A program made the position numbers and the translations under genes. This document shows, one piece after another, positions 1 to 40,060 of a DNA stretch of 64,000 bases (position 1 is the first letter of the stretch; each line of letters starts with the position of its first letter). The notes under the pieces were generated by a model. The model worked only from the letters and a program-made list of their open reading frames with translations. It was not told the DNA's origin and ran no database searches. This DNA is from Mobula birostris (Eukaryota): the NCBI RefSeq assembly GCF_030028105.1, contig NC_092379.1, forward strand, positions 19,569,309 through 19,633,308, read 5' to 3'.

Positions 1-1805
1 CTCCGAAACGACTATGTTCGCTCCGTTAAAAATATTGACCAGATATTCACTTAGCGTTCATTAAACATCATCCCAGTTTGTAATTTACTCTGGGAAGTGC
101 ATGTATGTTCAGCAGTCCCTCCAAGACAGTTTATCCAAAGACCTGCTGTTAGTTCCTGCGTATTCATTTCATTGATTATTATCTCTGCAGTTAAAGCCTT
201 TCAGACTGCTAACAGATCTGCCAGCCTTGTGTGAGTGGCAAAGTTTGTCATGTGTGTTTCTGCCCAATATCTAAACCATGAATAAATCTAGTGAATAGTG
301 TCAGCACTGAACACATTGCTGCAGGTCACAGGGCATCACTGTCTACATATTGTCCCTTCTTTCTGTAGCTCTCCACTTTCTGAATGAGATCACTAAATGT
401 CTTCACAAAGTTGATGAAATATCTTTCCCTGTCAATTACCTTTGTATATTTGAAACTGCGGACCAATCCAGAATGTTCTGTCATCTGTACAGTAGAAACT
501 AGAATACACATACACCTATAACCATTTGAATGTCTGTCTGCCTGTCTATATAATGAAGGACAGAACCAACCAGGCAACACTTCCAGCCCCTCATGTTTGA
601 GTCACACAGTTGTATCCCAAAACATACCGGCACGGAACACTGGCAGCCGAATGCTTTCCGTACCTTCTTTATTGAACTTTGATTGCACAAACACAGGCTG
701 ACATTCAACCTCTCATGTAGTCTACAGAAGTTTCCAACAGGATCAGACCTGACACTAGGAAGTTTTTAAAAAAAACTGCAGGATCTCAGACATGTTAGTA
801 ATTTATTTTGATGTATTTAATCATGGAAATATATATTTCCATTTTGAGCTAATGAGAAAGAACTTGCAGGTAACCTTGCTTGTTTCAGGGAGATAAACCA
901 CATTGTTGTAGGATCAGCCACCAACTGGAGGTTGACCAGTGGGGTAGCTGGCCACGGGAATCTCTGCTGCAAAGAACTCAGTGACCTGACACTTGTCCTT
1001 TTATCTGATGAGGAAGTGTAGCTTTAGAGGGTTCCTACTGGGAATGGACTTTTTTATTCATCTGAAGTTTTCCTGGAATATTCTGCTCTTACACCATTCA
1101 GGCTAATATTTACACCAGGAGTGATCTCTCCACATCTAAAATGTAAAGGCTTTTTACTTTTGGAAATGAAAGAGAAATTGTGGAAAGTGTTCAGTGGGTT
1201 AGAAAACACTTGTGAACAGAGAAAGGGATAACATTGAGAGAGCATCACAAGTGTACTCTGTACCATTGCTTCAGCACTAGTTCTGTGCCTGGCTGAGTAC
1301 TGTGCATCTCTCTGGTTTACTGGAACTCAACAACTGTCTGGTGTCCAGTTACATTCCACGATGCCTGCTCCAGTGAAACTCAGTTCCTCCAGTTCTGCTG
1401 ACAGATAGACTTGCTTCATGTTTCTGAGATGCTGGTGTGAGAACATTGACCCTGCAGTCATTATTTCATCATTCCCTCACTGACAAGGCCGGCATTCCTT
1501 GCTCTGCTCCAGCAGGTCCGTCACAGAGCAGTGAAGAGTTTGGTGTGGGAATTATGGATACAGGTAAACAGGGTAGGAAGGGCAGTGTCCTTCACCAAAG
1601 AACATCAGTGAAATAGTTTGTAATCTAAAACTGGCTTGAAGCATTGAATGAACTCTGATTCTTTCCCACTCTCTGCCTCTGCATTATTAATCCACTCACA
1701 CAACTACAACAATGCCAGACTTGCCGTTACCTATTGACCTTGCTTGTCCCTGGGTTGTGGCTGTGGCAGAGGATGTCAACAGTACAGTGAATCTCAGAAT
1801 CATAC

Positions 1806-2129
1806 CTTGAATGTTTTTCACATCCTGCCTGACACTGGTGTTGGAGGGGGGATGAGACACTGTGCATCTGAAAACTGAGCCTTCCTTCCACTCCTCTGTG
1901 CTCACGGTCAGGTCGTAGCTGGCAATGAAAGTCCCTGCCTGTTCCAGAGCAGTTGGTCTCACACTGGTGTTGGAAGAGATCAGAGAGTCCCCTTTCTCCC
2001 AGGTGGCGGTTATTTGGTCCGGGTAGAATCCAGAGGCAACACACTCGAGGGTGACCGTGTTCCCACTGTTGGTCTCTCCCTCTGGCGGTGGCAGCAGTCT
2101 GACTTTGGGACTTTTTGTCTCCAGTGGAA
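1806..2129 (-). CDS. IGHW: Constant exon C4'' (paralogue of C4')
   Basis: Open exon, ccatcag|TT...CAAG|gtatg. 9 nt differences from C4' over the shared 318 nt by hand count. Acceptor is shifted 6 nt upstream. Confidence 0.88.
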
Positions 2130-2212
2130 CTGATGGGCAAACAATGGAAATGTCAAACATTTTTACTGAGGTAACCAACGTTGTCCATTTTAATCGCTGA
2201 CCTCTTGCCCAC

Positions 2213-2515
2213 CTTTGGTACTTTTTGTCCGTGCTGATACTGGTGAGGTTGCAGAAGGTTGTTGGGCAGAGCAAGTGTACTCCACCCCACTGGTCCACTC
2301 CTCCACACTGGTCTGGAGTTGGCTGATCACTGTATCTTGGGTTCCTTCCTCTCTTGGTTTTTTGGTCACATTTGCTTTAACTTTCTCCCTCTCGTTCACC
2401 TTCCAGTGGATTTGGACCTGGCTCAGATCAGCACCCACAATCATACACACCAGAGTAGCGGTCTGGTTGATCCACATCTCTTCAATGGAGGGATTTTGGA
2501 TAAAGACGGACAACT
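2213..2515 (-). CDS. IGHW: Constant exon C3'' (paralogue of C3')
   Basis: 303-nt open exon with AG/GT sites. 6 nt differences from C3' by hand count. Confidence 0.9.
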
Positions 2516-3389
2516 CTGTAGATGAGTAATAGAAAACTTACAAACTGGACGATATCTATTGTCAGCTGGCTTGACAACTTCAGCTCAGACTTATCCTGAA
2601 GCTCAACTTGTACATAATTGTACAATGGGGTGAAATCAGGTTTGTCTGCAGAGTGGGTTTGCTCATCTCTGTTTACAACCTTTGAATGAGAAAACAAAAT
2701 CAAACATCAAGGAGCTTCTTTCCTTGGGACCCAGTTGGGTCACAACAGGGACTACAGGACAGTTGCCCAGCTACGTGACATTTAGCTGCTGCAATGCCAA
2801 TCAAATGCACTATCAGAGCTGTCAATTGCAATGAGAGATGCAGTTTCTCATGAAAGATGACATTTCCTGAAATCTTCTTGTCTTGGAGCATGTGAGAGCC
2901 TGTAGATCCATTTGTGACATTGAGCTGAATCAATGAGCTGCCTCATATCTGTTAGGACTGAGCCTGAGATTCCTCCAGAATGAAAATTCTGATGCTGACT
3001 TTCGAATCTCCCATGAAAAATCTCTCTTTTCATTTCTGTAACTTGCCTGCCCTAGTCAATGATCTCACTTTGTTCCAGTTGTCCTATTCACTTCATCTAT
3101 TTCCATCTCTACACTTTAAACCTCCCTGCCATTCTATTTCCTGTGGAGTCTGCTTTTCACTTGCTGGACACTCATAGACATGGCTTTGTGTCCCATCATC
3201 CACATCATTAGTAATATCAGTGAATAGTTGCAGGGCGGACAAAGATCATTGCAGGGCACTGCTCACGATTAAATCCTGCTGGGTTCAGTCCCCTGTCACA
3301 TGACACAGTGATAATGGAGTTGTTGATGAATGATTGCAAACAATTTCAGTCCATTAGTCTACAGCAGATCCAGGCATGGTGTGGGGCAG

Positions 3390-5924: not shown

Positions 5925-7420
5925 TCACTGTGATGTTGTTAAACATGTTTTTTGCAGGTTTCTCAGTTATGTCCCATATCAGCACTGTCTTGATGTTCAG
6001 CAGTCACTTGGAAATGTTCCCCTTATTGCTGAATGCTGGTGTTATTCCACAAGAAGTATAGAATTCTGTCAATGCTTGAGTAATTCTAACAAAACATTCT
6101 TCTTTCTGGTATTCCTTGGGATCACTGAGTTGCCCTCTTGGACTGAATTCAGTGTCCGGCACGTGGACCAATGTAACTTTAGCAATTTGTCTGATCCAGG
6201 ATTTAAACACAAAGCATAACAGATTGGACAGGAGACTGGTTAGACCCCTGTGTCTTGTCTCACCGATTTGTCTTGTGCCCAACATTATCAAAGGGTCATC
6301 CGTCCTTTGACAGAGTCAATTTAGAATTTCAGCCCCGTTCACCTTCATCACCTCATGCCTCACAGCCATTGGGTGAAAAACAGGTTCCAGTTCTTGCTGA
6401 CTGGAGTTAGACAACAGGGAATCTGGCCAAAGAAACTGGAATTGGGATCTGAGTCACACTGAAGCAACAATGTACACAAATGAATGAGTGTATGGACAAC
6501 CAGAAACACAGGAGATTCTACAGATGCTGGAAATCTTGAACAACACACACAAAGTGCTGGAGGAACTCGGCAAGTCAGGCAGCATCTATGGATGGAAATA
6601 AACAGTCGATATTTTGGGCTGAGAGATTTCACTGGTACAGGAAAGGAAGTGGGCAGAAGCCAGAATAAGAAGGTGGGAGGAGTAGAGAGGAATACATTCT
6701 GTCAGATGAGAGGTGAGACCAGGTGAGGGGGAAAGTGTGTGGATGGGGGAGGCAGTATGAAGTAAGAAGCTGGTAGGGCATAAGTGGAAGAGATAAATGG
6801 CTGAAACAGAAGGAATCTGAGAGGACAGTGGACCATGGAGGGAAGTGCAGGAGAAGGGGAACCAAATGGAAATGATGGGAAGGTGAGGAGAAACGAAGGG
6901 ATGAGGGTGTATCTAGTATGAGGAATAGAATAAAAGGGAGAATAAAGGAGTGGGGGATCATTACTGGAAGTTAAAAAATAAGTATTCATGGAATCAGTTT
7001 GGCAGGTACCTGGATGGAATATGAGGTGTTGCTACTCCAACCTGACTTTGGCCTCACCATGGCAGTAGAGGAGCCCATGGACAGACATGACAGAATGGGA
7101 ATGGAAAGTCAAATTGAAATAGGTGGCCACGAGGATAATAGAAATGTGATTGGAGAGGTAGTCAGTTTCAATCGTGTTTTATTCTCTCTCTGTTAAACTT
7201 CAATCCCAATGGATACCAGAGGCAGGTCTAGAATCCAGTAAGTGGATAGCAATAAAATTCATTGATGAATTGTATACACAGCCAATCACTTTATTTCACA
7301 CTTTCCTGCTGAACAATGATACTGTTGGGTAGAACCATCGGAGAATGTTGCATTGAGATTACTCTGGTAAAAGAACTTTGGCACAGGCTCCGAAAAACAG
7401 CTGGGACATTTTCCACCTGG
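5925..7420. repeat. Segmental duplication, homologous to ~62400-63920
   Basis: Colinear match (e.g. cactgtgatgttgttaa...aaacagctgggacattttc), including a shared Penelope-derived fragment. Confidence 0.93.
6500..7130. mobile_element. Penelope-derived fragment shared by both clusters (also ~63010-63650)
   Basis: Contains the common elasmobranch repeat caaaatgctggaggaactc...gcagcatct and purine-rich sequence I associate with Penelope termini. Confidence 0.55.
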
Positions 7421-7892: not shown

Positions 7893-8349
7893 CACCAACA
7901 CCGCCGGGTATTTCTTATTTTTTTTTAGCATGTCATACCAGACATTCAGCCATTCTTGTCTGGCACGTGGTGTCAGGATTAACCGGGTCACGTTATGAAC
8001 GTTCCTGACTCGACCCTTATATATTTCTTACGAGGCCAAGTGGCTATCTCGACACTCAACCGGGCACGGATGGACAGCGTGCTCGGGAGTGGGGAAAGCG
8101 TGCTAGGGAGTGGCCTAACCAGGATTTGAACTCGGGAACATTCGCTCCAGAATCTGGTGCTGATCTCACTGCGCCACCAGCCGGCCTGGAATTTCTTAAT
8201 TCCAGTGGTGATGTCCCCACTGTTAGTGGACCATGTCTGACTGATGCTCTCAGGCTAATAGTCCTTGACCAGACAGAGGAGGCTGATGCCTTGGTCAGAT
8301 TCTGTGTTGCAGGAAGGAGTGATGTAGACTGATGGTGCGGACTTGACCT
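7893..8349 (-). pseudogene. IGHW: Truncated IgW C1 exon (EVKSAPSVYITPSCNTESDQGISLLCLVKDY*PESISQTWSTNSGDITTGIKK[SINE]YPAVL)
   Basis: ttccatttcag|AG acceptor, light-chain-binding-type Cys (PSC), CLVKDY motif and Trp. In-frame TAG at 8255-8257. Ig similarity stops after PAVL. Confidence 0.88.
7918..8183 (-). mobile_element. tRNA-derived SINE inserted in C1
   Basis: A box TGGCGCAGTGAG, B box GAGTTCAAATCC, A-rich tail, and a degenerate 15-bp target-site duplication (TAAGAAATTCCAGGC / TAAGAAATACCCGGC). Confidence 0.85.
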
Positions 8350-11300
8350 CTGAAATGGAAAGAAATTCACAGGCGGTTCTCTGAATAAATGCATTACTGG
8401 CAGAGAAAGGAGACGTTTTATAAAGCAGTAATTTTCAAAATTATTCACCTCATGAAACAAAGCTGATATCACTTTAACACTCAGCTGTGAGTCTGTGTCG
8501 CTGAGGTAGGAGGGTGTGGATCAATCCCACAGTGGCAACTTGGACTCACAATCCAGGCCAACACTTCAGTGCAGGACTGAGGCAGTGACCCAATGTCCGA
8601 TTGGTGGAATTTCAGCCAAAATACCAAAGTGACAATCTGTCTCTCCTCCAAATACAATTCCTGATTCGGAAAAGTCTGTTAGCACTTGATCAATGAAGTT
8701 TACAAAAAAAGTAAGATTTAGAAGTAACTTATTGGAATAATTCTGATGTGTTCAGTGTTGCTGTTGATGAGAGGAGTGATTGGTGTGGATATAGTGGTAC
8801 CGAGTCTCCAGCACCATGTGTGCAGTATAGTGGAGGTTGGGAAATGGACTCTGCTTCTGAAATTCAACTCAACAGACTACATGATGCAGCTGACACTGCC
8901 TCACATATTTACCGTGTGTGACTGAGCAAGAATTCCAACCCCACTGAGTCTGTGGAAACTACTGGCTAACTGGGAGGGAATGGTAACTTGCATCAGAAAG
9001 GACAGAGGAACTGTGGAAATACATTAGCCCAGACTCTGTGGAGAAGTGTCGGCCAACACAACCGACAGTGACGATGAGATTCCTGGGGAGATGGAGAATT
9101 CTCAAAGTGTTGTTAGATGTAGGTGATATTCTCACTGAACGACCAGCCCAGAGAGGAAATGCAGGTTGTAGCAATTCCCAACCACTTAAGGTGTGAAATA
9201 CACTTGAAAGCACTGTTTCTTAATTCATTTCACAGGAAAAGGAGACGTGTTGACTTACTAAGGTAGGTAAAGGTGTGAAGATCAATTAGCTAATTGACCA
9301 ATTGACAGCTTTGACAGGTGGATATGTGGTTTGACCAGTTGTCAGAGTTACCTTGAACAGTGTTGTGGACGGGGTTTGTTCTGACCCACTGACGTGACAT
9401 CATTCACCTCATGATTGACACTGTCAATGACAGATTGTTGCTGGTGGATGAGGTTAAAATCACCCAAAAAGACTGTGTGGACACAGCAGGAGCTCTGGGA
9501 GTAGGAGACTAGCGGGAGGGTATGTGTCAGACAGTGTGAATTGCAGTAGATGAGGGCTTTGTTGCCCAACAGTAAGATGGTCAACAGACACACACAGGCT
9601 TCAGATCGATTCTGCTATTGGAAGGGCAGCAAATTCAACATTTGGAGTGGAAGTGGAGTGGTGGGAAGGTCACAATTTCATTCAGGGGCAAAATAATGAA
9701 ATATTCACTTCACAGTCATCACTCTGGGACAAAAGGCATAAAATATTGAAATCTGGGTTTCAAATAGAATGAATATAAATCAATAACTATCTCAAGTAGA
9801 TAGGAATCGATATAATGTAACTGGTCAGTAATGACAGCTGCATTGTTTTGAACCATTTCAAGGTGACACTGGGGACTGTGAACTCAGAATATTTGCCTTC
9901 CTGAGCAAACACAGGTGATTCAGGTTGACAGGACAGGCAGAGCAGAGAAATGGTCCCTTTCTCATTCCTTTCAGACTGGGCCTGAAACAACCAGTGAAAT
10001 GCTGACGTCAGACTCCCCATCGGGGACACAACTTCTGTCAAACAGTGGGACAAGCTGACCTGTGCTGTGATTGAAGTGTCACAGGAGAGAAAGCACAGGG
10101 CACGGTGCCAGCCGGACCATGTCCACACAGACCGGGCTGAATGGTGCTGGTTCAAACCTACTGGGACTCTCCCCACACTCCTACACTGGGAAAGGTGGGA
10201 CCTCACTGGGTTTCTGGATGCTGGCGGCTTGTGTTGAGGTGTATCAGGGCCTCAGCATTAAATAGCCTCAGACAACACCCTGCTGGGACTCTGGGTCCAG
10301 AACACCCTGATGGGAGGGGTTTGTCTTGTGTTAATGCTGTCATGTAATTAACAGGTTCAAAATGACTTGGAAACATTAAAGTTAATGTAAATTCCTGTGG
10401 CAACAATTAATTTTGCATATTTTGTTTAAAATAATAAATCTGAAATGCATTAAAACATAATAATCAGACAGAAATCATTCCTGGATAAATCCCTTCCCAA
10501 GGCCCGGAATCCCCAGTCAGATGAATGGAAAATGTGATCCTTTGTCAGGTCCGGCCTGTGAGGGAAACGTGGAGGTGGATTTCCCAGTGTTACCCTGGGA
10601 ATTCCAGCAGGACCTGGTGCCATGTGGTAGTGTGTGGTCACTGCTCTGGAGGCATATGTCACTCAGTAAATCCTGGGTTACAGTGGTCTGTGGAACTGTG
10701 AGATTGACTCCAGTGTAAGTGACTGAACACTAGTTGTCTCCTTCAGACTGCCAGGCACAACCAGCACCATTTCACCCACACTATCCTCAGCTTCCCAGGT
10801 AGACAGTACCTCAGGAAAGGGCTGGTCAGCTGTAGTCTGAGGAGCCTTACTGCTCTTTATCAGTGTCAACCCCTGACAGCAGGGGAATTGCTGGCCCAAA
10901 GACTAGGGACCATATGGATGGCCTATAACTAACTAGTGTTTGTCTATTCATCTACTGCATAGTCAGAATTCAGCTGAGGACTTCTCAGTGGTGGGGAACT
11001 TTAGGAATTGTAGGCCGAAAGTGACCATTCCCTTCCAACATCACCCAAGCGGACTAGATTGTCATGTCGTAGTTCAGTTTGTGGGAACAAGATGCAGACA
11101 AGTTGGAGGTTTAGTCCCCCACATGAAGTGACACACTGCAGAAGTACTTGCTGGGTTGGAAAAGGCTCTGGGATGTTCTGGGGTTGTAGAAGTCAATGAA
11201 AAACAGATTGTTTTCTTGAAAATAAATTCTGTAAAATAACACTGGAAACAGCGTAGTTGCCAGAAATCAGACTGACGGAGTCTGGTGAAAGGTCACTGAT

Positions 11301-11500: not shown

Positions 11501-11844
11501 CAGGGTGCTGGGGTGAAGAGAGGAACTGGATCTGGGTGGGTCACAGGGTGCTGGGGTGAAGAGAGGAACTGGATCTGGGTGGGTCACAGGGTGCGGGGGT
11601 GAAGAGGGGAACTGGATCTGAGTGGGTCACAGGGTGCTGGGGTGAAGAGGGGAACTGGATCTGGGTGTGTCACAGGGTGCTGGGGTGAAGAGGGGAACTG
11701 GATCTGGGTGGATCACAGGGTACTGGGGTGAAGAGGGGAACTGGATCTGGATGGGTCACAGGGTGCTGGGGTGAAGAGGAGAACTGGATCTGGGTGGATC
11801 ACAGGGTGCTGGGGTGAAGAGGGGAACTGGATCTGGGTGGATCA
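11501..11844. repeat. G-rich minisatellite, 8 copies of a 43-bp unit
   Basis: Unit CAGGGTGCTGGGGTGAAGAGGGGAACTGGATCTGGGTGGGTCA starts at 11501, 11544, 11587 ... 11802. Confidence 0.97.
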
Positions 11845-14298
11845 GCTCAGAAGAAATTTGCAATGAAATAACACTTGGGAATTTGTACGAAATGATTGCC
11901 CAGAATCAGCAGATTGGGGGAGACTCAGTCTGATTTTAGTCTGTATTGTACTAAGTGGATAGAATATCGGGTAGTATGAACGAAAGATGGGCAGTTTTAT
12001 TTATTCATCCTTTGGGATCTGGGCTTTGCCGGTAAAGTCTGAATGAATTACGCATCTGAGCTGCTATTCAGAGGGCATTTGGAGACAAACACATTGATGG
12101 ATCAGGAGTCATAAATAGGCTCGAAGGGTCAGGATGACAGATCTCCTTCCCTGAGGGACATCAGTAAAACTGAAGGGTCATCATTACCAATGATTGGATT
12201 TAAAAACAATACCAATTATTAAAATCTTGGAAATCCGACCACAGATCCAAATCTGTATTATGAACTGAGTATAAATTTGTCAATTTTGTTATGGTGGTAT
12301 CCGTGGACTGTTCATCCATCCCTCTGCACTACTCATTTGCTTTGATGTACTGTCCTGTTTCCAATCACTCCAAATCCAACCTTGTGCCTGTCCATTGGAT
12401 CACTGTGTCCACGGTGTCCTGGACAATATTTCTCCTTCAATAACATCACCAGAACAGACTGTCTGATCGTTCTCGCCTTGCCGTTTGTGGATTCTGCTGT
12501 ATGCAGAGTGGCTCCACATTCCCGACTCTACAACAGGGCTGTACTTTGAAACAACTTCATTGCCTGTGAAGACCTCGGGGGCACCATGAAAGGTGCTCTG
12601 TAAATGTCAGCACTTTATCTCACAACCACTTTTACTGAATCACCAGCAACACTGGTTAACGTAGGAAAACACTTGTTAAACAAACCCAGTCGGGGGATGG
12701 AGGAGGACAAGAAATTAGATGAGTTGCTCTGTCTGTGAACTAAGAATAAACAGTTCATTTGAACAGTAAAGTTCAACTCGTGTCCCGTGAGTGTGTGATG
12801 GGACAGGTTGGGGGAAGCTTCACTCTGTGTCTAATCTCTGCTGCCCCTGTCCTGGGAGGGATGGGACAGTGCAGAAGGATCTTTGTATCTAATCCGTGGC
12901 TGCCAGGACAGGACATGGGAGCTGTGATCTGCATTTAACTCATGCTCTGTGTACTCTGGGGTGCTTGTTGGAATCCCTTTGAGGAAGAATTTCCCAGATT
13001 TACAAGATAAATACTGATTCCATTGAATGATAGAGCAGAGAGTGAGGCCGTTCATCCTATTGTTTCTGTGCTTCATTTAGCTGAGCAAACCCAATAGACC
13101 CATTGGTCTCTCTGCTCTTCCCTGTATCCCTACAAAAGGCGGATCTCATCCTGTTCCCTCTCCACACTCACTATTGGCCATCACCATCATTCAGGCAGTG
13201 TGTCCCAGATCACAAACCTTCATCAACAAACCTTCCCTTAAATGCTCCCCTATTACACATTATTGAATTGAACGCTTCCCTCCCCACCCCACCTGCACCA
13301 CTCCCCACTCCCCCACCCAACAATGCAAGGCTGCCCGGAACGTGTGAAGGAATTGAGATTTCAGTTCCCCGCCTTACCTTTCCTGCACCACTTCCCCACT
13401 GCCTTCCCAACTCCAAAAATCTTCCCCACAGTACCCCACCTCCTCGCCCATCAGGGAATAAAACTAAAACCTCAATTCCATCAATTAATCCTGGGATATC
13501 GCCGATACTTTTGCTGTATCCCAGGACGGACCTCATGCCGGACATTACATGATGGGACTGACACCCACCTGTACCCTGGGGATATTGAGACATCAACCAG
13601 ATCATACATGTGTACACCGTTCCCTCAGATTATGTCTGAATCCCATTACCTTCAACATGAAAGCAGCCGACAGTAAAACCCAATCCCAGTAATTTGACAC
13701 CGAACAGATCCATTGTTGTCACTGACAGGGAACAAGTTCAACTGCACTGAAACGCTCAGCCCCTGAACGTGGCTTCAGTCGGTGCTGAGGATCAGAAGCC
13801 AGACTTGAACCAAACACTGAGCTCACTCAGCACAATCGGCCGGTGTCAAGGCACAGTCTGGTGACAAGATCCGACCCCATTCCCCTGAGCCTGTTCCCGG
13901 TCTGTGGACAGTGCACTGGTGGGTGGGGTGTGTACCCTTGTACTGTTACTGTGCTCTAGAGAAACCCGCCGGTTCGGGGAGATTCATGTACTTTCTCTAA
14001 ATATCAACATGATCCCTGTCCGGACCGGGAGCAGCCGCTTCCAGGATTTCCATCCCAAACTCTGTCCTTGTCTCTTGTTGGCGTGTGAGTAAAGGCATTT
14101 TCACAATTTCCCTGTCTGCGGACACCGGCTCCCGCCATCCCCCAGAATCAGAGTCAAATCCTTTTGGGCTTTTAATTGTCCAGAAATGGGCATTTGCGCC
14201 CAGCAGTCCGAGTAAGGCTTCAGGGATTTGACTCTGGGAAGCAGCAATGCGGAATCCGTGGAGACAGACTGCGCTGCAGACGCTCCTTTGTCGGGACC

Positions 14299-14326
14299 AA
14301 TTTCTGTTCAGCTCCCCATCACCGTG
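14299..14326 (-). promoter_or_regulatory. Recombination signal sequence, 12-bp spacer (CACGGTG-12-ACAGAAATT)
   Basis: Heptamer matches CACAGTG at 6/7 and nonamer matches ACAAAAACC at 6/9 at exactly 12 nt. At a 23-nt spacer the nonamer would be TCCCGACAA, a poor match. Confidence 0.75.
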
Positions 14327-14631
14327 CTCCCACCCTCTCGCACAGTAATAGGTGGCAGTGTCGTCCAGTCTCAGGTTGTTCATTTGCAGATAGACGGTGC
14401 TGCTGTCCTTGGAAACAGTGAACCGGCTCTGGACTCCAGGCGCGTTGTACTTGTTACCACCACTCGATATGTCTGCCAGCCACTCCAGCCCTTTCCCGGA
14501 GACCTGTCTCACCCAGTCCATGCTATAGCTGCCGAGGCTGAACCCACTGACCGCACAGTCAGTCTGTGAGAATGTCCGGGCTTTACCACAAGCTGACTCG
14601 GGCTGTGTCAGCACGACGGCGGACCGCACGC
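14327..14631 (-). CDS. IGHV: VH exon with appended D-like bases (AVVLTQPES...[28 protein letters not shown]...RFTVSKD...[12 protein letters not shown])
   Basis: ttgacag|GC acceptor, conserved Cys, WVRQ, GLEW and YYCAR. Full CDR2 region, so a conventional VH rather than VNAR. FR1 is partly frameshifted (see findings). Confidence 0.93.
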
Positions 14632-14740
14632 CTGTCAATAAAAAAGAGCAGAAATTAATAAAATGTTCTACGGTCAGGGGTTCACAAAGCCTCTGAGAAA
14701 CAGCCGGTCCCGGTTGAGCGACAAGCGGCGGGACACCCAC

Positions 14741-14786
14741 CTGCCAGACAAGACAAGGGAAGACAGAAATAAGGCACGACCCCCAT
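14741..14786 (-). CDS. IGHV: VH leader exon ([16 protein letters not shown])
   Basis: ATG at 14786, 46 nt, CAG|gtgggt donor, phase 1. Joins in frame to GVRS at the start of the V exon across a 109-nt intron. Confidence 0.85.
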
Positions 14787-16199
14787 CGCCCTGAACACTG
14801 AGCCGGACTTGGACACTTTGAGATCGGCGGCTTCAGCTCAGGCCGGCTTTGTCCGGAGTCGCAGTGAGCGCTGTTTAGATAGGGACGTGGGCTGTGAGTG
14901 AGAGAGGGAGCCGCGGTTTGAACAGGCTCTCACACACTGAAACCAGAGGCGCAGCTTCCTGTCCCCACCCACAGCAGCGATTTCAATTCCCCAAAAGATG
15001 TTTGTCTCTGCAACAGGCGGCAGGTCAGCGGCAGTGACCAGATCCGGATTAAAGATCGGTCACTCTCTGTTCGATTCATCAATTTCAGCGATGAACAGTT
15101 TGTTTAAACTGAAACACACAGAATCCCAGCGAGAGAGAATGAGAGACACCAGTCAGTGGACAGATATCCCCCGGGAGACAGGGACTGAGAGACCAGTCAA
15201 TGGACAGATATTCTCCTTAGAGACATAGGCTGAGACTGTCTTTGCAGGAAAATGTATGAAGCAACAAAAAGAGTTACCACACAATCTTCTCACTGCTCCC
15301 ACACCACAAGAATCAATGCTAAACAGCGATTCCTGGTGGAAATGGGTGGAATTTACACTTATAAGGTATTTTCTCTTTCAGGGACTTGGCACCATGAATT
15401 TCAGTGCCAAGCCCTCAGCAGTTCTCCCCACAAAATCTTTTTAACCTGTTTCAGTGTGATACTGGTTGAGGGATCAATGTCGGAACAGATAGTGGAGAAC
15501 TTTCCAAACCTTTTATGTCCACCTGACACAACAACCCCACCATGGCACCAGTCAAAATAGTGAAACTTCTTTTTACCCCCAAGAGGACCACAATCTTGTC
15601 AAAGAGTATCGTGGCTTGTGTGCCTCAGTGAACCAGAGATCTATGTTGGCTTACATCGGGGTCTTGTGCTTTAACTCTAGGTAGGGTCACCCATGCCAAA
15701 CATGTGAAAGGATAGAGACTGAACAAAGAACGGTTCACCGTTCCTCCAGGTTTGGAGTTTCAGGTCAGGGTTAGTGAACCTGACTTATTATAAAGAAAAT
15801 TGTAATTGTTACGAGATGCTCCCAACTGTGCCAGCTTCCAGGATTTAGACTCTCCAACTCTCTGGAGCACAGATAGCCGGTAGCAGCCCCTTTAAGGTTC
15901 AGGATGATCCCGCTAATTGATAATCATGTTTTGGGCACCAAGAATTGAGTATGAAAGAACACCTGAACTGATGTTCAGTGCTCAATGGTAAACCCTACTA
16001 GTGATATTGTCTAGCATTCGTTTTGTGCTCAGACCTGGATCCAGTTTGATACCGTGTCTCGATCTTTGTTTCGGATACTCCAGCATTTGGGTCCAAAGCA
16101 TCTTCATCAAAGACTCTTGTCGCAATTATGGAAACAGCAATGAAGAATCCTTCTACATCTGAGTGTGATAGTGTTCCCTAGTCACCACCCGGGACTTGC

Positions 16200-17700
16200 A
16201 TGGCTGACAGGAGTGAAAACAGAGAGGAAACTATGGGTATGGTGAAGGGAGCCATGAACTTTGCCAAGACCAAGACCAAAAATGTTTTTTGGAATTGTCG
16301 AACCATGTACAACACTGTCAAGCTAGCACAAATAACTACGGTAATGTGTCATTACAGCCAACGTACACTGGCATCAGTGAAAGCAGATGGTCAGGGTCTG
16401 GCAGACTAAAGGCAGCAGCTGGTGCAGCAGTTTTATATTCAGGAAGGGAAGATGGTCAACGTCATGATGGATTAGCTGTCATTTTGAAGAAAGGCATTGA
16501 GAAGTGCCCAGTGGAATGAAAACCAATCAACAGTCGGCTGGTGAGAGTCAGGCTGAGAGTGAAGCAAGTGAACATGACTGTGATCCAGTGTTATGCTCCA
16601 AATAACAATAGTGACATTGAAGAATAGGATATCTTCTACAAATGGTGGAGTTAGAGTTAACACCACGCCGTGACATAATCATCATCATTGGAGATCTAAA
16701 TGGCAAAGTGGGAAATAACAACTCACACTTCATTAGGGCCATGGATACGCAAGGATATAGGATGATCAATAACAATGGTGTTAAGTCTGGTGGAATTCTG
16801 TGCCATGAACAATCTGGTCACAGGAGAGACCCTCTTTCCACACCATGAAATAAACAAACTGACATGGAGCTTACCCAATGGATGTGACAAGATCCAGATT
16901 GACCATTTGATGATAAATGGTATGTGGAGACGATCCTTGCAGGGTGTAAAGGTGAAGAGAGGAGCAGATACAGGAAGTAATCATCACCTTGCTGTAGCAG
17001 TGATGAAACTCATGCTGAGAAGCACTGGGACCACAGCACATGTACAAAGATGTTTTGATGTTGAGAAACTTAAGAACATCAGTGTGAGATCTGCCGTCAC
17101 CATTCAGCTTAAGGAGGGCTTTCAGACATTGGCGGGGATGTGTCAGTGGACAAGATCAACACGATGTAGAAACAGATTGCATCAGTGTTCAACAAGAGCA
17201 GCGAGGCTTGTCTACATTACAGCGCTGGAAAAAATAACAAAGCATGGATACAGCAGGAAACATGGACAGACTTAGAAGAAAGATGGAAAATTAGGAAGAA
17301 AATGTTCAATGCAAAGTCAACACGAATTAAGGTGAAACTTTAATTGGCATTCACTGAAGCTAGCAAGAAAGTGAAGAGCTTCTAAGAGTGGATAAGAGAG
17401 TCTACATAGAAGACCTTGCACTGGCGGCCACAAGAGCGCCAGTCGATGTGATCAGGAAAATATATACAAGATTTCAAAACTGGTATGTGGAATGTTCCAA
17501 GCCAGATCCAGTAGCCCCATGAGAGGCAAGAAGGGTCTGCTTTTGACAAGAGAATGGAGCACGATGGACAGGGTATTTCAGAAATTTACTGAGTAGACGC
17601 AGAGGACCTCTGGAAGGCCCCCTGTTCAGATTAAGTCAAGCCACATCTCCGACAGGAAGCTGAGAAGGAAATATCCCAATATCACTGTCCAGTTTCACCC
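16200..17700 (+). mobile_element. RTE-clade LINE remnant (AP endonuclease)
   Basis: Broken frames IQCYAPNN, IIIGDLNGKVG, KLTWSLPNG...QIDHLMI, GADTGSNHHL. Confidence 0.85.
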
Positions 17701-39909: not shown

Positions 39910-40060
39910 NNNNNNNNNNNNNNNNNNNNNNNNNNNNNNNNNNNNNNNNNNNNNNNNNNNNNNNNNNNNNNNNNNNNNNNNNNNNNNNNNNNNNNNNNNN
40001 NNNNNNNNNNNNNNNNNNNNNNNNNNNNNNNNNNNNNNNNNNNNNNNNNNNNNNNNNNNN
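39910..40060. other. Assembly gap (151 N)
   Basis: Run of n characters. Confidence 1.

What the first reader, a model, noticed from the sequence alone, without database searches (positions are those of the whole stretch)
14299..14344. Apparent germline-joined V-D with a 12-RSS directly after the VH
Seen: TGT GCG AGA is followed by 9 nt (GGGTGGGAG) and CACGGTG-12-ACAGAAATT, with no good 23-spacer nonamer. Known: unrearranged elasmobranch VH carry a 23-RSS almost immediately after CAR, the J-proximal D has a 3' 12-RSS, and germline-joined VD-J clusters occur in sharks and skates. Inference: this is a fossil RAG-mediated V-to-D joint fixed in the germline, here in an IgW cluster.
Basis: partly seen in the sequence, partly recalled or inferred. 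Interest (0 to 1): 0.7.

Follow-up and report, generated by a model that had tools for sequence, protein, structure and literature searches.

The report
Germline VD-joined dead manta IgW gene
In this manta ray antibody (IgW) gene the V piece is already fused to D-segment remnants in the inherited DNA; this state has long been known in sharks and rays, and this copy is a decaying pseudogene that has also lost its J piece.

Summary
On the minus strand, the only VH in the window ends TGT GCG AGA (14344-14336). It is followed by GGGTGGGAG (14335-27), then CACGGTG-12-ACAGAAATT (14326-14299). No 23-spaced nonamer is present.

An unrearranged sawfish IgW cluster (V-23RSS, D1, D2, J) settles the question. 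Manta homology runs through the V to CAR+G. It resumes exactly at the first base of the 3' heptamer of D2, the last D, and continues through the D2-J spacer (82% over 325 nt). The 858 bp in between are replaced by 8-9 nt. Canonical ray VH paralogs end CAR+GA and carry a 23-RSS. Unrearranged mobulid copies show D2 = ATATGGAG, which supplies the joint's last 4 nt.

Words spanning the joint occur in runs of two organism labels from three studies, so the joint is inherited.

The gene is dead:
- FR1 has two compensating frameshifts.
- A 214-bp non-RAG deletion removed the J.
- CH1 has a stop codon and is truncated.
- CH2 to CH6 are missing.

This is a new member of a known kind (VD-J / VDD-J germline-joined clusters). 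The scan had already noted sister cases elsewhere on this chromosome (s1-145298, s1-145675, s1-145442).

The parts
14741..14786 (-). Leader exon (ATG at 14786-14784; [16 protein letters not shown]), splice donor gt at 14740
   Evidence: Sequence read. 81.7% collinear with the Pristis L001 leader and V. It matches the N-terminus of NCBI model P0042.
14336..14631 (-). VH exon ending in CAR (TGT GCG AGA, 14344-14336). FR1 carries a 1-nt insertion (a T at 14591/14590) and a 1-nt deletion (between 14558 and 14557). Together these scramble 12 codons: [12 protein letters not shown] instead of the canonical [12 protein letters not shown].
   Evidence: Translations in three frames. Pfam V-set hit. Comparison with the Pristis V and with the second V inside P0047. 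Every other copy in three other organisms lacks the insertion, while organism A's contigs carry both indels (table 4).
14327..14335 (-). Coding joint GGGTGGGAG. The first G may still be V (canonical V ends ...AGAGA). The last 4 nt, GGAG, are the 3' end of D2. The middle GGTG is of uncertain origin (D1 remnant or N/P nucleotides).
   Evidence: V homology ends at 14335 and D2-RSS homology starts at 14326 (alignment A1). Unrearranged copies in organisms B and E read CACCGTG-ATAT|GGAG-heptamer. The D1 remnant of Pristis L002 ends in GGGTGG.
14299..14326 (-). Retained 3' 12-RSS of D2: CACGGTG - ATGGGGAGCTGA - ACAGAAATT. It is now an orphan, with no J partner in cis.
   Evidence: Aligns to the Pristis D2 3' RSS CACGGCG-GTGGGGAGCTGA-ACACAAACT: heptamer 6/7, spacer 11/12, nonamer 6/9. 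It is the only such pattern in the window.
14005..14298 (-). D2-to-J intergenic DNA
   Evidence: blastn: manta 14326-14004 matches L001 11318-11642 at 82.5%, E = 7e-91.
14003..14006 (-). Breakpoint of a deletion (214 bp in Pristis coordinates) that removed the J 23-RSS, the J coding segment, its splice donor and about 90 bp of intron. The ends share a GA/TGA microhomology and do not lie at RSS borders.
   Evidence: L001 11643-11856 has no counterpart in manta. J-bearing copies in organisms B and E run on at 13999/14005 into sequence that matches the Pristis J flanks.
12789..14004 (-). J-C intron homolog. It includes a J-like mimic at about 13460-13380 (AGTTTTATT-23-TACTGTG, then 49 nt, then gtaagg) that is conserved intron, not a J.
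   Evidence: 77.7% to L001 11857-13075. The mimic corresponds to L001 12430-12530, about 700 bp downstream of the real Pristis J.
8156..8353 (-). CH1 remnant with an in-frame stop (KDY*PESIS); its 3' half is lost
   Evidence: tblastn: 89% to Hemitrygon P0054 CH1 over 57 aa. Frame translation. No Pfam hit for the ORF.
7289..7417 (-). CH2-tail or hinge-like exon remnant; the body of CH2 is absent
   Evidence: tblastn: 77% to P0048 residues 325-367. There is no hit to the Pristis CH2 exon in cluster A.
1699..2537 (-). C3''-C4'' exon pair, the only intact-looking constant exons of this cluster (context only; the subject of another finding)
   Evidence: Pfam C1-set hit. Cys-Trp-Cys ORF scan. 90-94% to the C3'-C4' pair of cluster B at 50.8-51.7 kb.

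Best explanation
This is a partly rearranged, germline-joined IgW heavy-chain cluster of the giant manta ray in the VD(D)- configuration.

In an ancestral germ cell, RAG-type V(D)J recombination joined the VH (23-RSS) to the cluster's D elements. Two routes obey the 12/23 rule: V to D1 and then D1 to D2, or V directly to the 12-RSS on the 5' side of D2. Either route deleted about 0.86 kb: the V 23-RSS, the V-D1 spacer, D1, the D1-D2 spacer and the D2 5' RSS. What remains is a 9-nt coding joint and the untouched 3' 12-RSS of D2.

The joined allele was inherited. The cluster then decayed:
- An ordinary 214-bp deletion removed the J.
- Two compensating frameshifts scrambled FR1.
- CH1 acquired a stop codon and lost its 3' half.
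- CH2 to CH6 were lost.

It is therefore a fossil of germline RAG activity, not a working gene.

Shown here: the breakpoints, the homology on both sides, the lesions, and the presence of the joint in several data sets. Inferred: that RAG made the joint, and the order of events.
For: 1. Collinear blastn against the unrearranged Pristis IgW cluster L001 (V-23RSS, D1 12/23, D2 12/12, J). Manta 15000-14335 matches L001 9812-10459 (V through CAR+G). Manta 14326-14004 matches L001 11318-11642, starting at base 1 of the D2 3' heptamer. The 858 bp in between are replaced by 8-9 nt.
2. Both deletion ends lie within a few nt of heptamer/coding borders, which is the signature of RAG cleavage.
3. Canonical paralogs and orthologs carry CAR+GA+CACAGTG-23-ACAAAAACC.
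4. Unrearranged mobulid copies read nonamer-12-CACCGTG-ATAT|GGAG-heptamer, so the joint ends with the 3' end of D2.
5. No V-D1-D2 spacer DNA and no J DNA occurs anywhere in the window.
6. All 4 sampled 31-mers of a 71-nt stretch across the joint are held by organism A's DNA runs, by four further organism-A runs, and by two runs labelled organism B from another study.
7. Organism A's contigs carry the FR1 indels, so these are not assembly slips.
8. The same kind of event is seen in Pristis L002 (V-D1 joined, keeping the D1 3' 23-RSS) and in a different VD joint in organism C.
9. Germline partly joined H-chain clusters and their RAG origin are established knowledge (PMC2193156, PMC5192425, PMC4279169).
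Against: - Manta's own unrearranged D1 and D2 could not be read directly, because Mobula assemblies are not held as DNA. The D2 assignment rests on 4 nt seen in contig loose ends from coded related organisms, and the origin of GGGT(G) is open.
- The three organism-A contigs that break at 14326 suggest D2 varies between copies (consensus agreement 0.72).
- The tissue source of the reads is unknown.
- Organism B's own DNA runs (X5-X8) did not hold the joint words, although two RNA-like runs with that label did.
- No table-8 piece spanning the joint was listed for X4, because 555 pieces were not shown. Direct bridging evidence is therefore the word search, plus one contig that crosses 14335 with a 1-nt gap.
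Confidence: 0.9

Rival explanations
1. A working VD-J gene: the pre-joined VD still uses its 12-RSS to rearrange to a J (23-RSS) and makes an IgW chain with restricted CDR3, like the early-life germline-joined genes of nurse shark.
For: The heptamer CACGGTG keeps CAC, and it is closer to consensus than the Pristis D2 heptamer CACGGCG. The reading frame stays open through the V. Small RNA-like runs hold the joint words, so it may be transcribed.
Against: The J, its RSS and its splice donor are deleted, and no J exists anywhere in the window. FR1 is scrambled over 12 codons and gains an extra Cys. CH1 has a stop codon and is truncated, and CH2 to CH6 are absent. The TATA-like box tatttaaa of Pristis reads tatctaaa here.
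Confidence: 0.03
2. A non-RAG deletion (replication slippage or NHEJ) that happened to remove the DNA between the V end and D2.
For: The same cluster has a clearly non-RAG 214-bp deletion at the J. Pristis L003 has a deletion from the mid V-D1 spacer into D2. So ordinary deletions do occur in these clusters.
Against: Both ends fall within about 1-5 nt of heptamer/coding borders: the V is trimmed by 1 nt and D2 by about 4 nt. The partner RSSs are removed precisely, and the D2 3' RSS is untouched. For a random 0.86-kb deletion this is roughly a 1e-4 coincidence (my estimate). The 12/23 rule is also obeyed.
Confidence: 0.04
3. A somatic (lymphocyte) VD rearrangement or an assembly artefact captured in the reference.
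For: The tissue of the sequenced sample is unknown to me. Sample S1 may be the source of the assembly.
Against: A somatic joint is private to one clone and would not become the assembly consensus. The identical joint words are in runs of a second organism label and of two further studies. The scan notes sister joined copies at other loci on this chromosome. The locus also carries several independent fixed lesions.
Confidence: 0.02
4. A native VH with an unusual 12-RSS of its own (inverted RSS logic) and a longer germline CDR3.
For: Nine extra nt after CAR is not impossible for a V segment.
Against: The RSS and 300 bp of flank are homologous to the D2 3' RSS and the D2-J spacer, not to V-flanking DNA. 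All comparators have a 23-RSS two nt after CAR.
Confidence: 0.01

Closest known systems
Partly germline-joined IgH clusters of cartilaginous fish (VD-J, VD-DJ and VDD-J types, first found in horned shark IgM; reviewed in PMC5192425 and PMC4279169; RAG-in-germ-cell origin argued in PMC2193156)
   Same: The V is fused to D-derived nucleotides in inherited DNA. The V 23-RSS and the D 5' RSS are lost. The last D's 3' 12-RSS is retained. The cluster (minilocus) organisation is the same, and many such genes are unexpressed or are pseudogenes.
   Different: This one is in an IgW (IgD-orthologue) cluster of a myliobatiform ray. The reviews I could read describe the state mainly for IgM and for light chains. 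This copy has also lost its J, so it is 'VD-' rather than VD-J.
Pristis pectinata IgW cluster L002
   Same: A batoid IgW cluster that is germline-joined at the V end. Its D1 remnant ends in GGGTGG, the hexamer that begins the manta joint.
   Different: Only V-D1 is joined, so the retained signal is the D1 3' 23-RSS. D2 and J are still free, and the J is intact.
Nurse shark IgM1gj (fully germline-joined VDJ, expressed in neonates; PMC4279169)
   Same: A product of germline V(D)J joining in an elasmobranch H-chain cluster.
   Different: IgM1gj is fully joined, in frame, expressed and functional. The manta gene is half-joined, J-less and dead.
Chicken pseudo-VH genes (germline-fused VD pseudogenes that serve as gene-conversion donors; discussed in PMC2193156)
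   Same: VD fused in the germline, with no J and no usable constant region. Apparently multi-copy.
   Different: No evidence here for use as conversion donors. The FR1 frameshifts argue against selection on the V.

Membership tests
Germline-joined (partly rearranged) Ig heavy-chain cluster of cartilaginous fish | The V coding end is fused to D-derived nucleotides, with loss of the V 23-RSS, the intervening spacer(s) and the D 5' RSS | tested here: met
   858 bp of the Pristis V-to-D2 interval are replaced by 8-9 nt. V homology ends at 14335 and D2-RSS homology begins at 14326. None of the missing DNA is found elsewhere in the window.
Germline-joined (partly rearranged) Ig heavy-chain cluster of cartilaginous fish | The remaining signal is the 3' RSS of the last D (12-nt spacer), followed by D-J spacer DNA | tested here: met
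   CACGGTG-12-ACAGAAATT aligns to the Pristis D2 3' RSS. The flank is 82.5% identical over 325 nt to the D2-J spacer.
Germline-joined (partly rearranged) Ig heavy-chain cluster of cartilaginous fish | The junction has the marks of V(D)J coding joints: ends at heptamer borders, small trimming, possible N/P nucleotides, 12/23 rule obeyed | tested here: met
   The V is trimmed by about 1 nt (canonical ...AGAGA|CACAGTG) and D2 by about 4 nt (ATAT of ATATGGAG). 4-5 nt are unassigned. V(23) to D1/D2 5'(12) is a permitted pairing.
Germline-joined (partly rearranged) Ig heavy-chain cluster of cartilaginous fish | Present in germline or non-lymphoid DNA and inherited | tested here: inconclusive
   The joint words are held by runs of two organism labels from three studies, and the FR1 indels are seen in reads. 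Tissue and species names are coded, and no listed contig piece was shown bridging the joint.
Germline-joined (partly rearranged) Ig heavy-chain cluster of cartilaginous fish | For the VD-J subtype: a free J with a 23-RSS downstream | tested here: not met
   The J, its RSS and its donor are removed by a 214-bp deletion, and there is no J in the window. The J-like element at 13460-13380 is conserved intron.
IgW (IgD-orthologous) heavy-chain cluster | V followed by IgW-type constant exons on the same strand | tested here: met
   The locus is collinear over about 8 kb with Pristis L001, which NCBI names 'immunoglobulin delta heavy chain-like'. There is a CH1 remnant and a CH2 tail. C3''-C4'' are C1-set exons 90-94% identical to those of the neighbouring IgW gene.
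Functional Ig heavy-chain gene | Intact V frame, a J, CH1 and downstream exons | tested here: not met
   Double frameshift in FR1, J deleted, CH1 stop and truncation, CH2 to CH6 absent.

The most novel reading that the evidence does not exclude
The joined, J-less cassette is not a lone fossil. It may belong to a recently amplified family of VD-joined IgW cassettes on this chromosome that is still transcribed.

Hints for this:
- Exact-match unitigs have roughly ten times the depth of single paralog contigs.
- One contig carries a 1-nt-shorter joint.
- The scan notes sister copies at -632 kb, +121 kb and +1.18 Mb.

Such cassettes could be retained as gene-conversion donors, like chicken pseudo-VH genes. 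Alternatively, their orphan 12-RSS could make them partners for trans-rearrangement.
Probability: 0.06. Interest if true: 0.6.

Novelty: new member of a known kind. Interest (0 to 1): 0.25.

Why it matters
This is a cleanly resolved example of RAG having acted in the germline, with both breakpoints mapped to the base against an unrearranged ortholog. It lies in IgW of a ray, a lineage and isotype for which such joints are little documented.

Together with the Pristis V-D1-joined cluster and the different joint seen in another mobulid, it shows that germline joining has recurred in batoid IgW clusters. It also shows that joined copies tend to decay. That is useful for annotating elasmobranch Ig loci: NCBI currently models this pseudogene as a 226-aa 'uncharacterized protein' that reads through the RSS. 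It is also useful for estimating how often germline RAG events occur.

It does not reveal a new mechanism.

Tried and rejected
- **Possible J at 13460-13380 (minus strand).** It looked like a J: AGTTTTATT-23-TACTGTG, then 49 nt, then gtaagg. I rejected it because it is conserved J-C intron, about 700 bp downstream of the real J in Pristis, where the 'heptamer' reads TTCAGTG.
- **Possible signal-joint-like CACTGTC|CACAGAC near 13900.** No nonamers lie at 12 or 23 nt on either side (read directly from the sequence). Rejected.
- **First protein search with the 98-aa V exon.** It returned only distant VH3-like proteins. Widening the length band with the 310-aa stop-free frame gave the ray comparators.
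- **The look-up of encoding contigs for Mobula birostris, M. hypostoma and Hemitrygon models.** It returned no DNA because the files are too large. Manta's own unrearranged clusters could therefore not be aligned.
- **Plasmid BLAST.** This was pointless for this genome.
- **Last protein search on the read-through tail of P0042.** It found no other gene model crossing the same joint.
- **The search of earlier findings by sequence.** It was blank.
- **Depth figures from Logan contigs.** I did not turn these into copy numbers, because the tool warns against it.

Full report
**Observation.**
The VH lies on the minus strand. Its parts are:
- leader exon at 14786-14741
- intron
- V exon at 14631-14336, ending TAT TAC TGT GCG AGA
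- GGGTGGGAG at 14335-14327
- heptamer CACGGTG at 14326-14320
- a 12-nt spacer
- nonamer ACAGAAATT at 14307-14299

The 9-mers 22 to 28 nt after the heptamer match the nonamer consensus at only 2-5 of 9 positions, so there is no 23-RSS. The pattern CACNGTG-12-ACANAAA occurs once in the 64-kb window on both strands, at this place, against 0.06 expected. It abuts the only VH in the window.

**Context.**
The window's own NCBI model (P0042, Mobula birostris, a 148.7-Mb chromosome) is a 226-aa 'uncharacterized protein'. It simply reads from the V through the RSS into the flank.

Two IgW genes lie on the minus strand:
- Cluster B has C3 to C6 plus the secretory tail at 60.4-57.0 kb, and a C3'-C4' pair at 51.7-50.8 kb.
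- Cluster A, the subject here, has the V at 14.7 kb and only a C3''-C4'' pair at 2.5-1.7 kb.

**Comparators.**
Gene models from M. hypostoma, Pristis pectinata and Hemitrygon akajei also read through their V ends. They translate as YYCAR-DTVRE.G.GPGQKP. That corresponds to CAR + GA + CACAGTG + 23 nt + ACAAAAACC, a normal 23-RSS two nt after CAR. The window reads [18 protein letters not shown] instead.

DNA for the Mobula and Hemitrygon assemblies is not held, but Pristis DNA is. L001 is an unrearranged 'immunoglobulin delta heavy chain-like' cluster with these elements:
- V ending tgtgcgagaga, followed by CACAGTG-23-ACAAAAACC
- D1 (actatatactggatgg), with a 3' CACAGTG-23-ACACAAACC
- D2: GGTTTGTGA-12-CACCGTG, coding atatggatatac, then CACGGCG-12-ACACAAACT
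- J: YLYYWGKGTSLTVTS|gtaaga

This is the classical elasmobranch layout. V(23) can join the 12-RSS on the 5' side of either D, and the last D faces J(23) with a 12-RSS.

**The decisive alignment.**
blastn of the manta minus strand against L001 is collinear:
- Manta 15000-14335 matches L001 9812-10459 at 81.7%. This covers the promoter, leader and V through CAR+G.
- Manta 14326-14004 matches L001 11318-11642 at 82.5%, E = 7e-91. L001 11318 is the first base of the D2 3' heptamer.
- The 858 bp of L001 between these blocks are represented in manta by 8-9 nt (alignment A1). That interval holds the V 23-RSS, the V-D1 spacer, D1, the D1-D2 spacer, the D2 5' RSS and the D2 coding segment.
- None of that DNA occurs elsewhere in the window.

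The alternative, a decayed 23-RSS with V-D1 spacer behind it, is excluded.

**Origin of the 9 nt.**
I laid Logan contigs of four organisms on 13800-14800 at 80% likeness or better and decoded the loose ends onto the minus strand.
- Canonical V paralogs break at 14335 and continue A-CACAGTG-agagag...ggaccgg, a 23-RSS. This is seen in organisms A, C and E.
- Unrearranged copies in organisms B and E break at 14330 and read ...TTTGTGG-cctgcggtgaag-CACCGTG-ATAT|GGAG-heptamer. Mobulid D2 is therefore about ATATGGAG, and the joint's last 4 nt are its 3' end.
- The remaining GGGT(G) is either added nucleotides or a D1 remnant. The D1 remnant of Pristis L002 ends in GGGTGG. The M. birostris model P0047 suggests a D1 ending ...TGGGATGG.
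- I therefore cannot decide between V-D2 and V-D1-D2.

The V lost about 1 nt and D2 about 4 nt. Both breakpoints sit at heptamer/coding borders and the 12/23 rule is respected. That is the signature of RAG joining rather than of a random deletion.

**Is it germline?**
- All 4 sampled words of a 71-nt stretch across the joint are held by the DNA runs of organism A's sample S1. That sample may be the assembly's source.
- The same words are held by four small runs of organism A from another study, and by two runs labelled organism B from a third study.
- A somatic joint is private to one clone and would not recur across organisms.
- One X4 contig crosses 14335 with a 1-nt gap, which suggests a sister copy.
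- The scan has independently flagged VD-joined IgW VH at -632 kb, +121 kb (also '9 extra nt and a 12-RSS') and +1.18 Mb. I could not read those sequences.
- Caveats: tissues and species are coded, organism B's own DNA runs did not hold the joint words, and I had no second read-laying run.

**State of the gene.**
- FR1 carries a 1-nt insertion (T at 14591/14590) and a 1-nt deletion (between 14558 and 14557). Frame 1 therefore reads [12 protein letters not shown] where frame 2 reads the canonical [12 protein letters not shown].
- Every contig of organisms B, C and E lacks the insertion, while organism A's contigs carry both indels. They are real, and specific to this copy or its close duplicates.
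- L001 11643-11856 has no manta counterpart. That stretch holds the J RSS, the J, its donor and about 90 bp of intron. The breakpoint at about 14005/14004 shows GA/TGA microhomology and is not at an RSS border, so it is an ordinary deletion.
- J-bearing copies exist in organisms B and E.
- The CH1 remnant (8353-8156) has an in-frame stop and lacks its 3' half. Only a CH2 tail (7417-7289) remains, and C3 to C6 with the secretory exon are absent.
- The cluster cannot make an antibody chain, and the 12-RSS is an orphan.

**Comparison with what is known.**
Partly (VD-J, VD-DJ) and fully joined clusters are a textbook peculiarity of cartilaginous fish, attributed to RAG activity in germ cells (PMC2193156, PMC5192425, PMC4279169). 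Joined H-chain genes of horned shark were not found to be expressed (PMC2193156).

- A V-D1-joined Pristis IgW cluster (L002).
- A Pristis cluster with a V-D1-spacer-to-D2 deletion (L003).
- A different VD joint in organism C: CAR + ACTGTGTGTGTCTGT + GGAG + heptamer.

The manta locus is therefore one more member of a known kind, here in IgW of a myliobatiform ray and in a terminally decayed state.

**Verdict.**
Novelty is low (a new member of a known kind), and the scan has already met the same phenomenon on other DNA of this genome.

The only open and mildly interesting question concerns the joined cassettes as a group. They may form an amplified, transcribed family with some secondary use, but I found only hints of this in the depth figures and in the sister notes.

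Noticed in passing
L002:6447-6520 (Pristis pectinata CM019866.1, 56083380-56108997 reversed): A germline V-D1-joined IgW cluster in sawfish: tgtgcgagt + ataactgggtgg + CACAGTG-22/23-ACACAAACC. The retained signal is the D1 3' RSS, and D2 and J are still free. NCBI's model P0058 nevertheless shows V-...-J-CH1-CH2 as a single protein.
   Followed up: partly
L003:6444-6790: A Pristis IgW cluster whose V has a normal 23-RSS. The mid V-D1 spacer is fused directly to ggtgatgtgggatatac + CACGGTG-12-ACACAAACT, so D1 and the D2 5' RSS are missing. This deletion does not follow RSS borders on its left side.
   Followed up: no
window 14330 (loose end in run X17, organism C): Two contigs carry a different VD joint on the same D2 RSS: ACTGTGCGAGA + ACTGTGTGTGTCTGT + GGAG + heptamer. 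A second, independent germline VD join therefore seems to exist in a related organism.
   Followed up: no
window 13380-13460 (minus strand): A J-like mimic in the J-C intron: T-rich nonamer, 23 nt, TACTGTG, 49 nt containing WGSG/FGVG-like codons, then gtaagg. It is conserved with Pristis L001 12430-12530, about 700 bp downstream of the true J. It may be an ancient dead J, or a coincidence.
   Followed up: partly
window 11501-11844: A tandem array of 8 copies of a 43-bp unit (94% matches) in the J-C intron. Pristis L001 matches around it (17400-17448) with what appear to be fewer copies.
   Followed up: no
window 14363-14507 and 14644-14800 (run X4): Exact-match unitigs have depth of about 530-560, against 30-50 for individual paralog contigs. 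The summed depth at 14256 in the D2-J spacer is about 8000. This suggests that about ten near-identical copies of this V exist, and that the family sharing the spacer is very large. The tool warns that depth is not copy number.
   Followed up: no
window 8156-8353 (minus strand): The CH1 remnant of cluster A is 89% identical to Hemitrygon CH1 over 57 aa, but it has an in-frame stop (KDY*PESIS) and lacks its 3' half. Earlier scan notes report selectively destroyed CH1 exons in other manta IgW genes.
   Followed up: partly
window ~14875 (minus strand): The TATA-like box tatttaaa upstream of the Pristis V reads tatctaaa in the manta copy.
   Followed up: no
window 14000-14786 (P0042): NCBI annotates this pseudogene as a 226-aa 'uncharacterized protein' that reads through the joint, the 12-RSS and the D2-J spacer. 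Several other ray models (P0049, P0050, P0056, P0057 and others) likewise read through 23-RSSs into spacers.
   Followed up: yes
window 39910-40060: A run of 151 N (assembly gap or masked stretch). I left it untouched.
   Followed up: no
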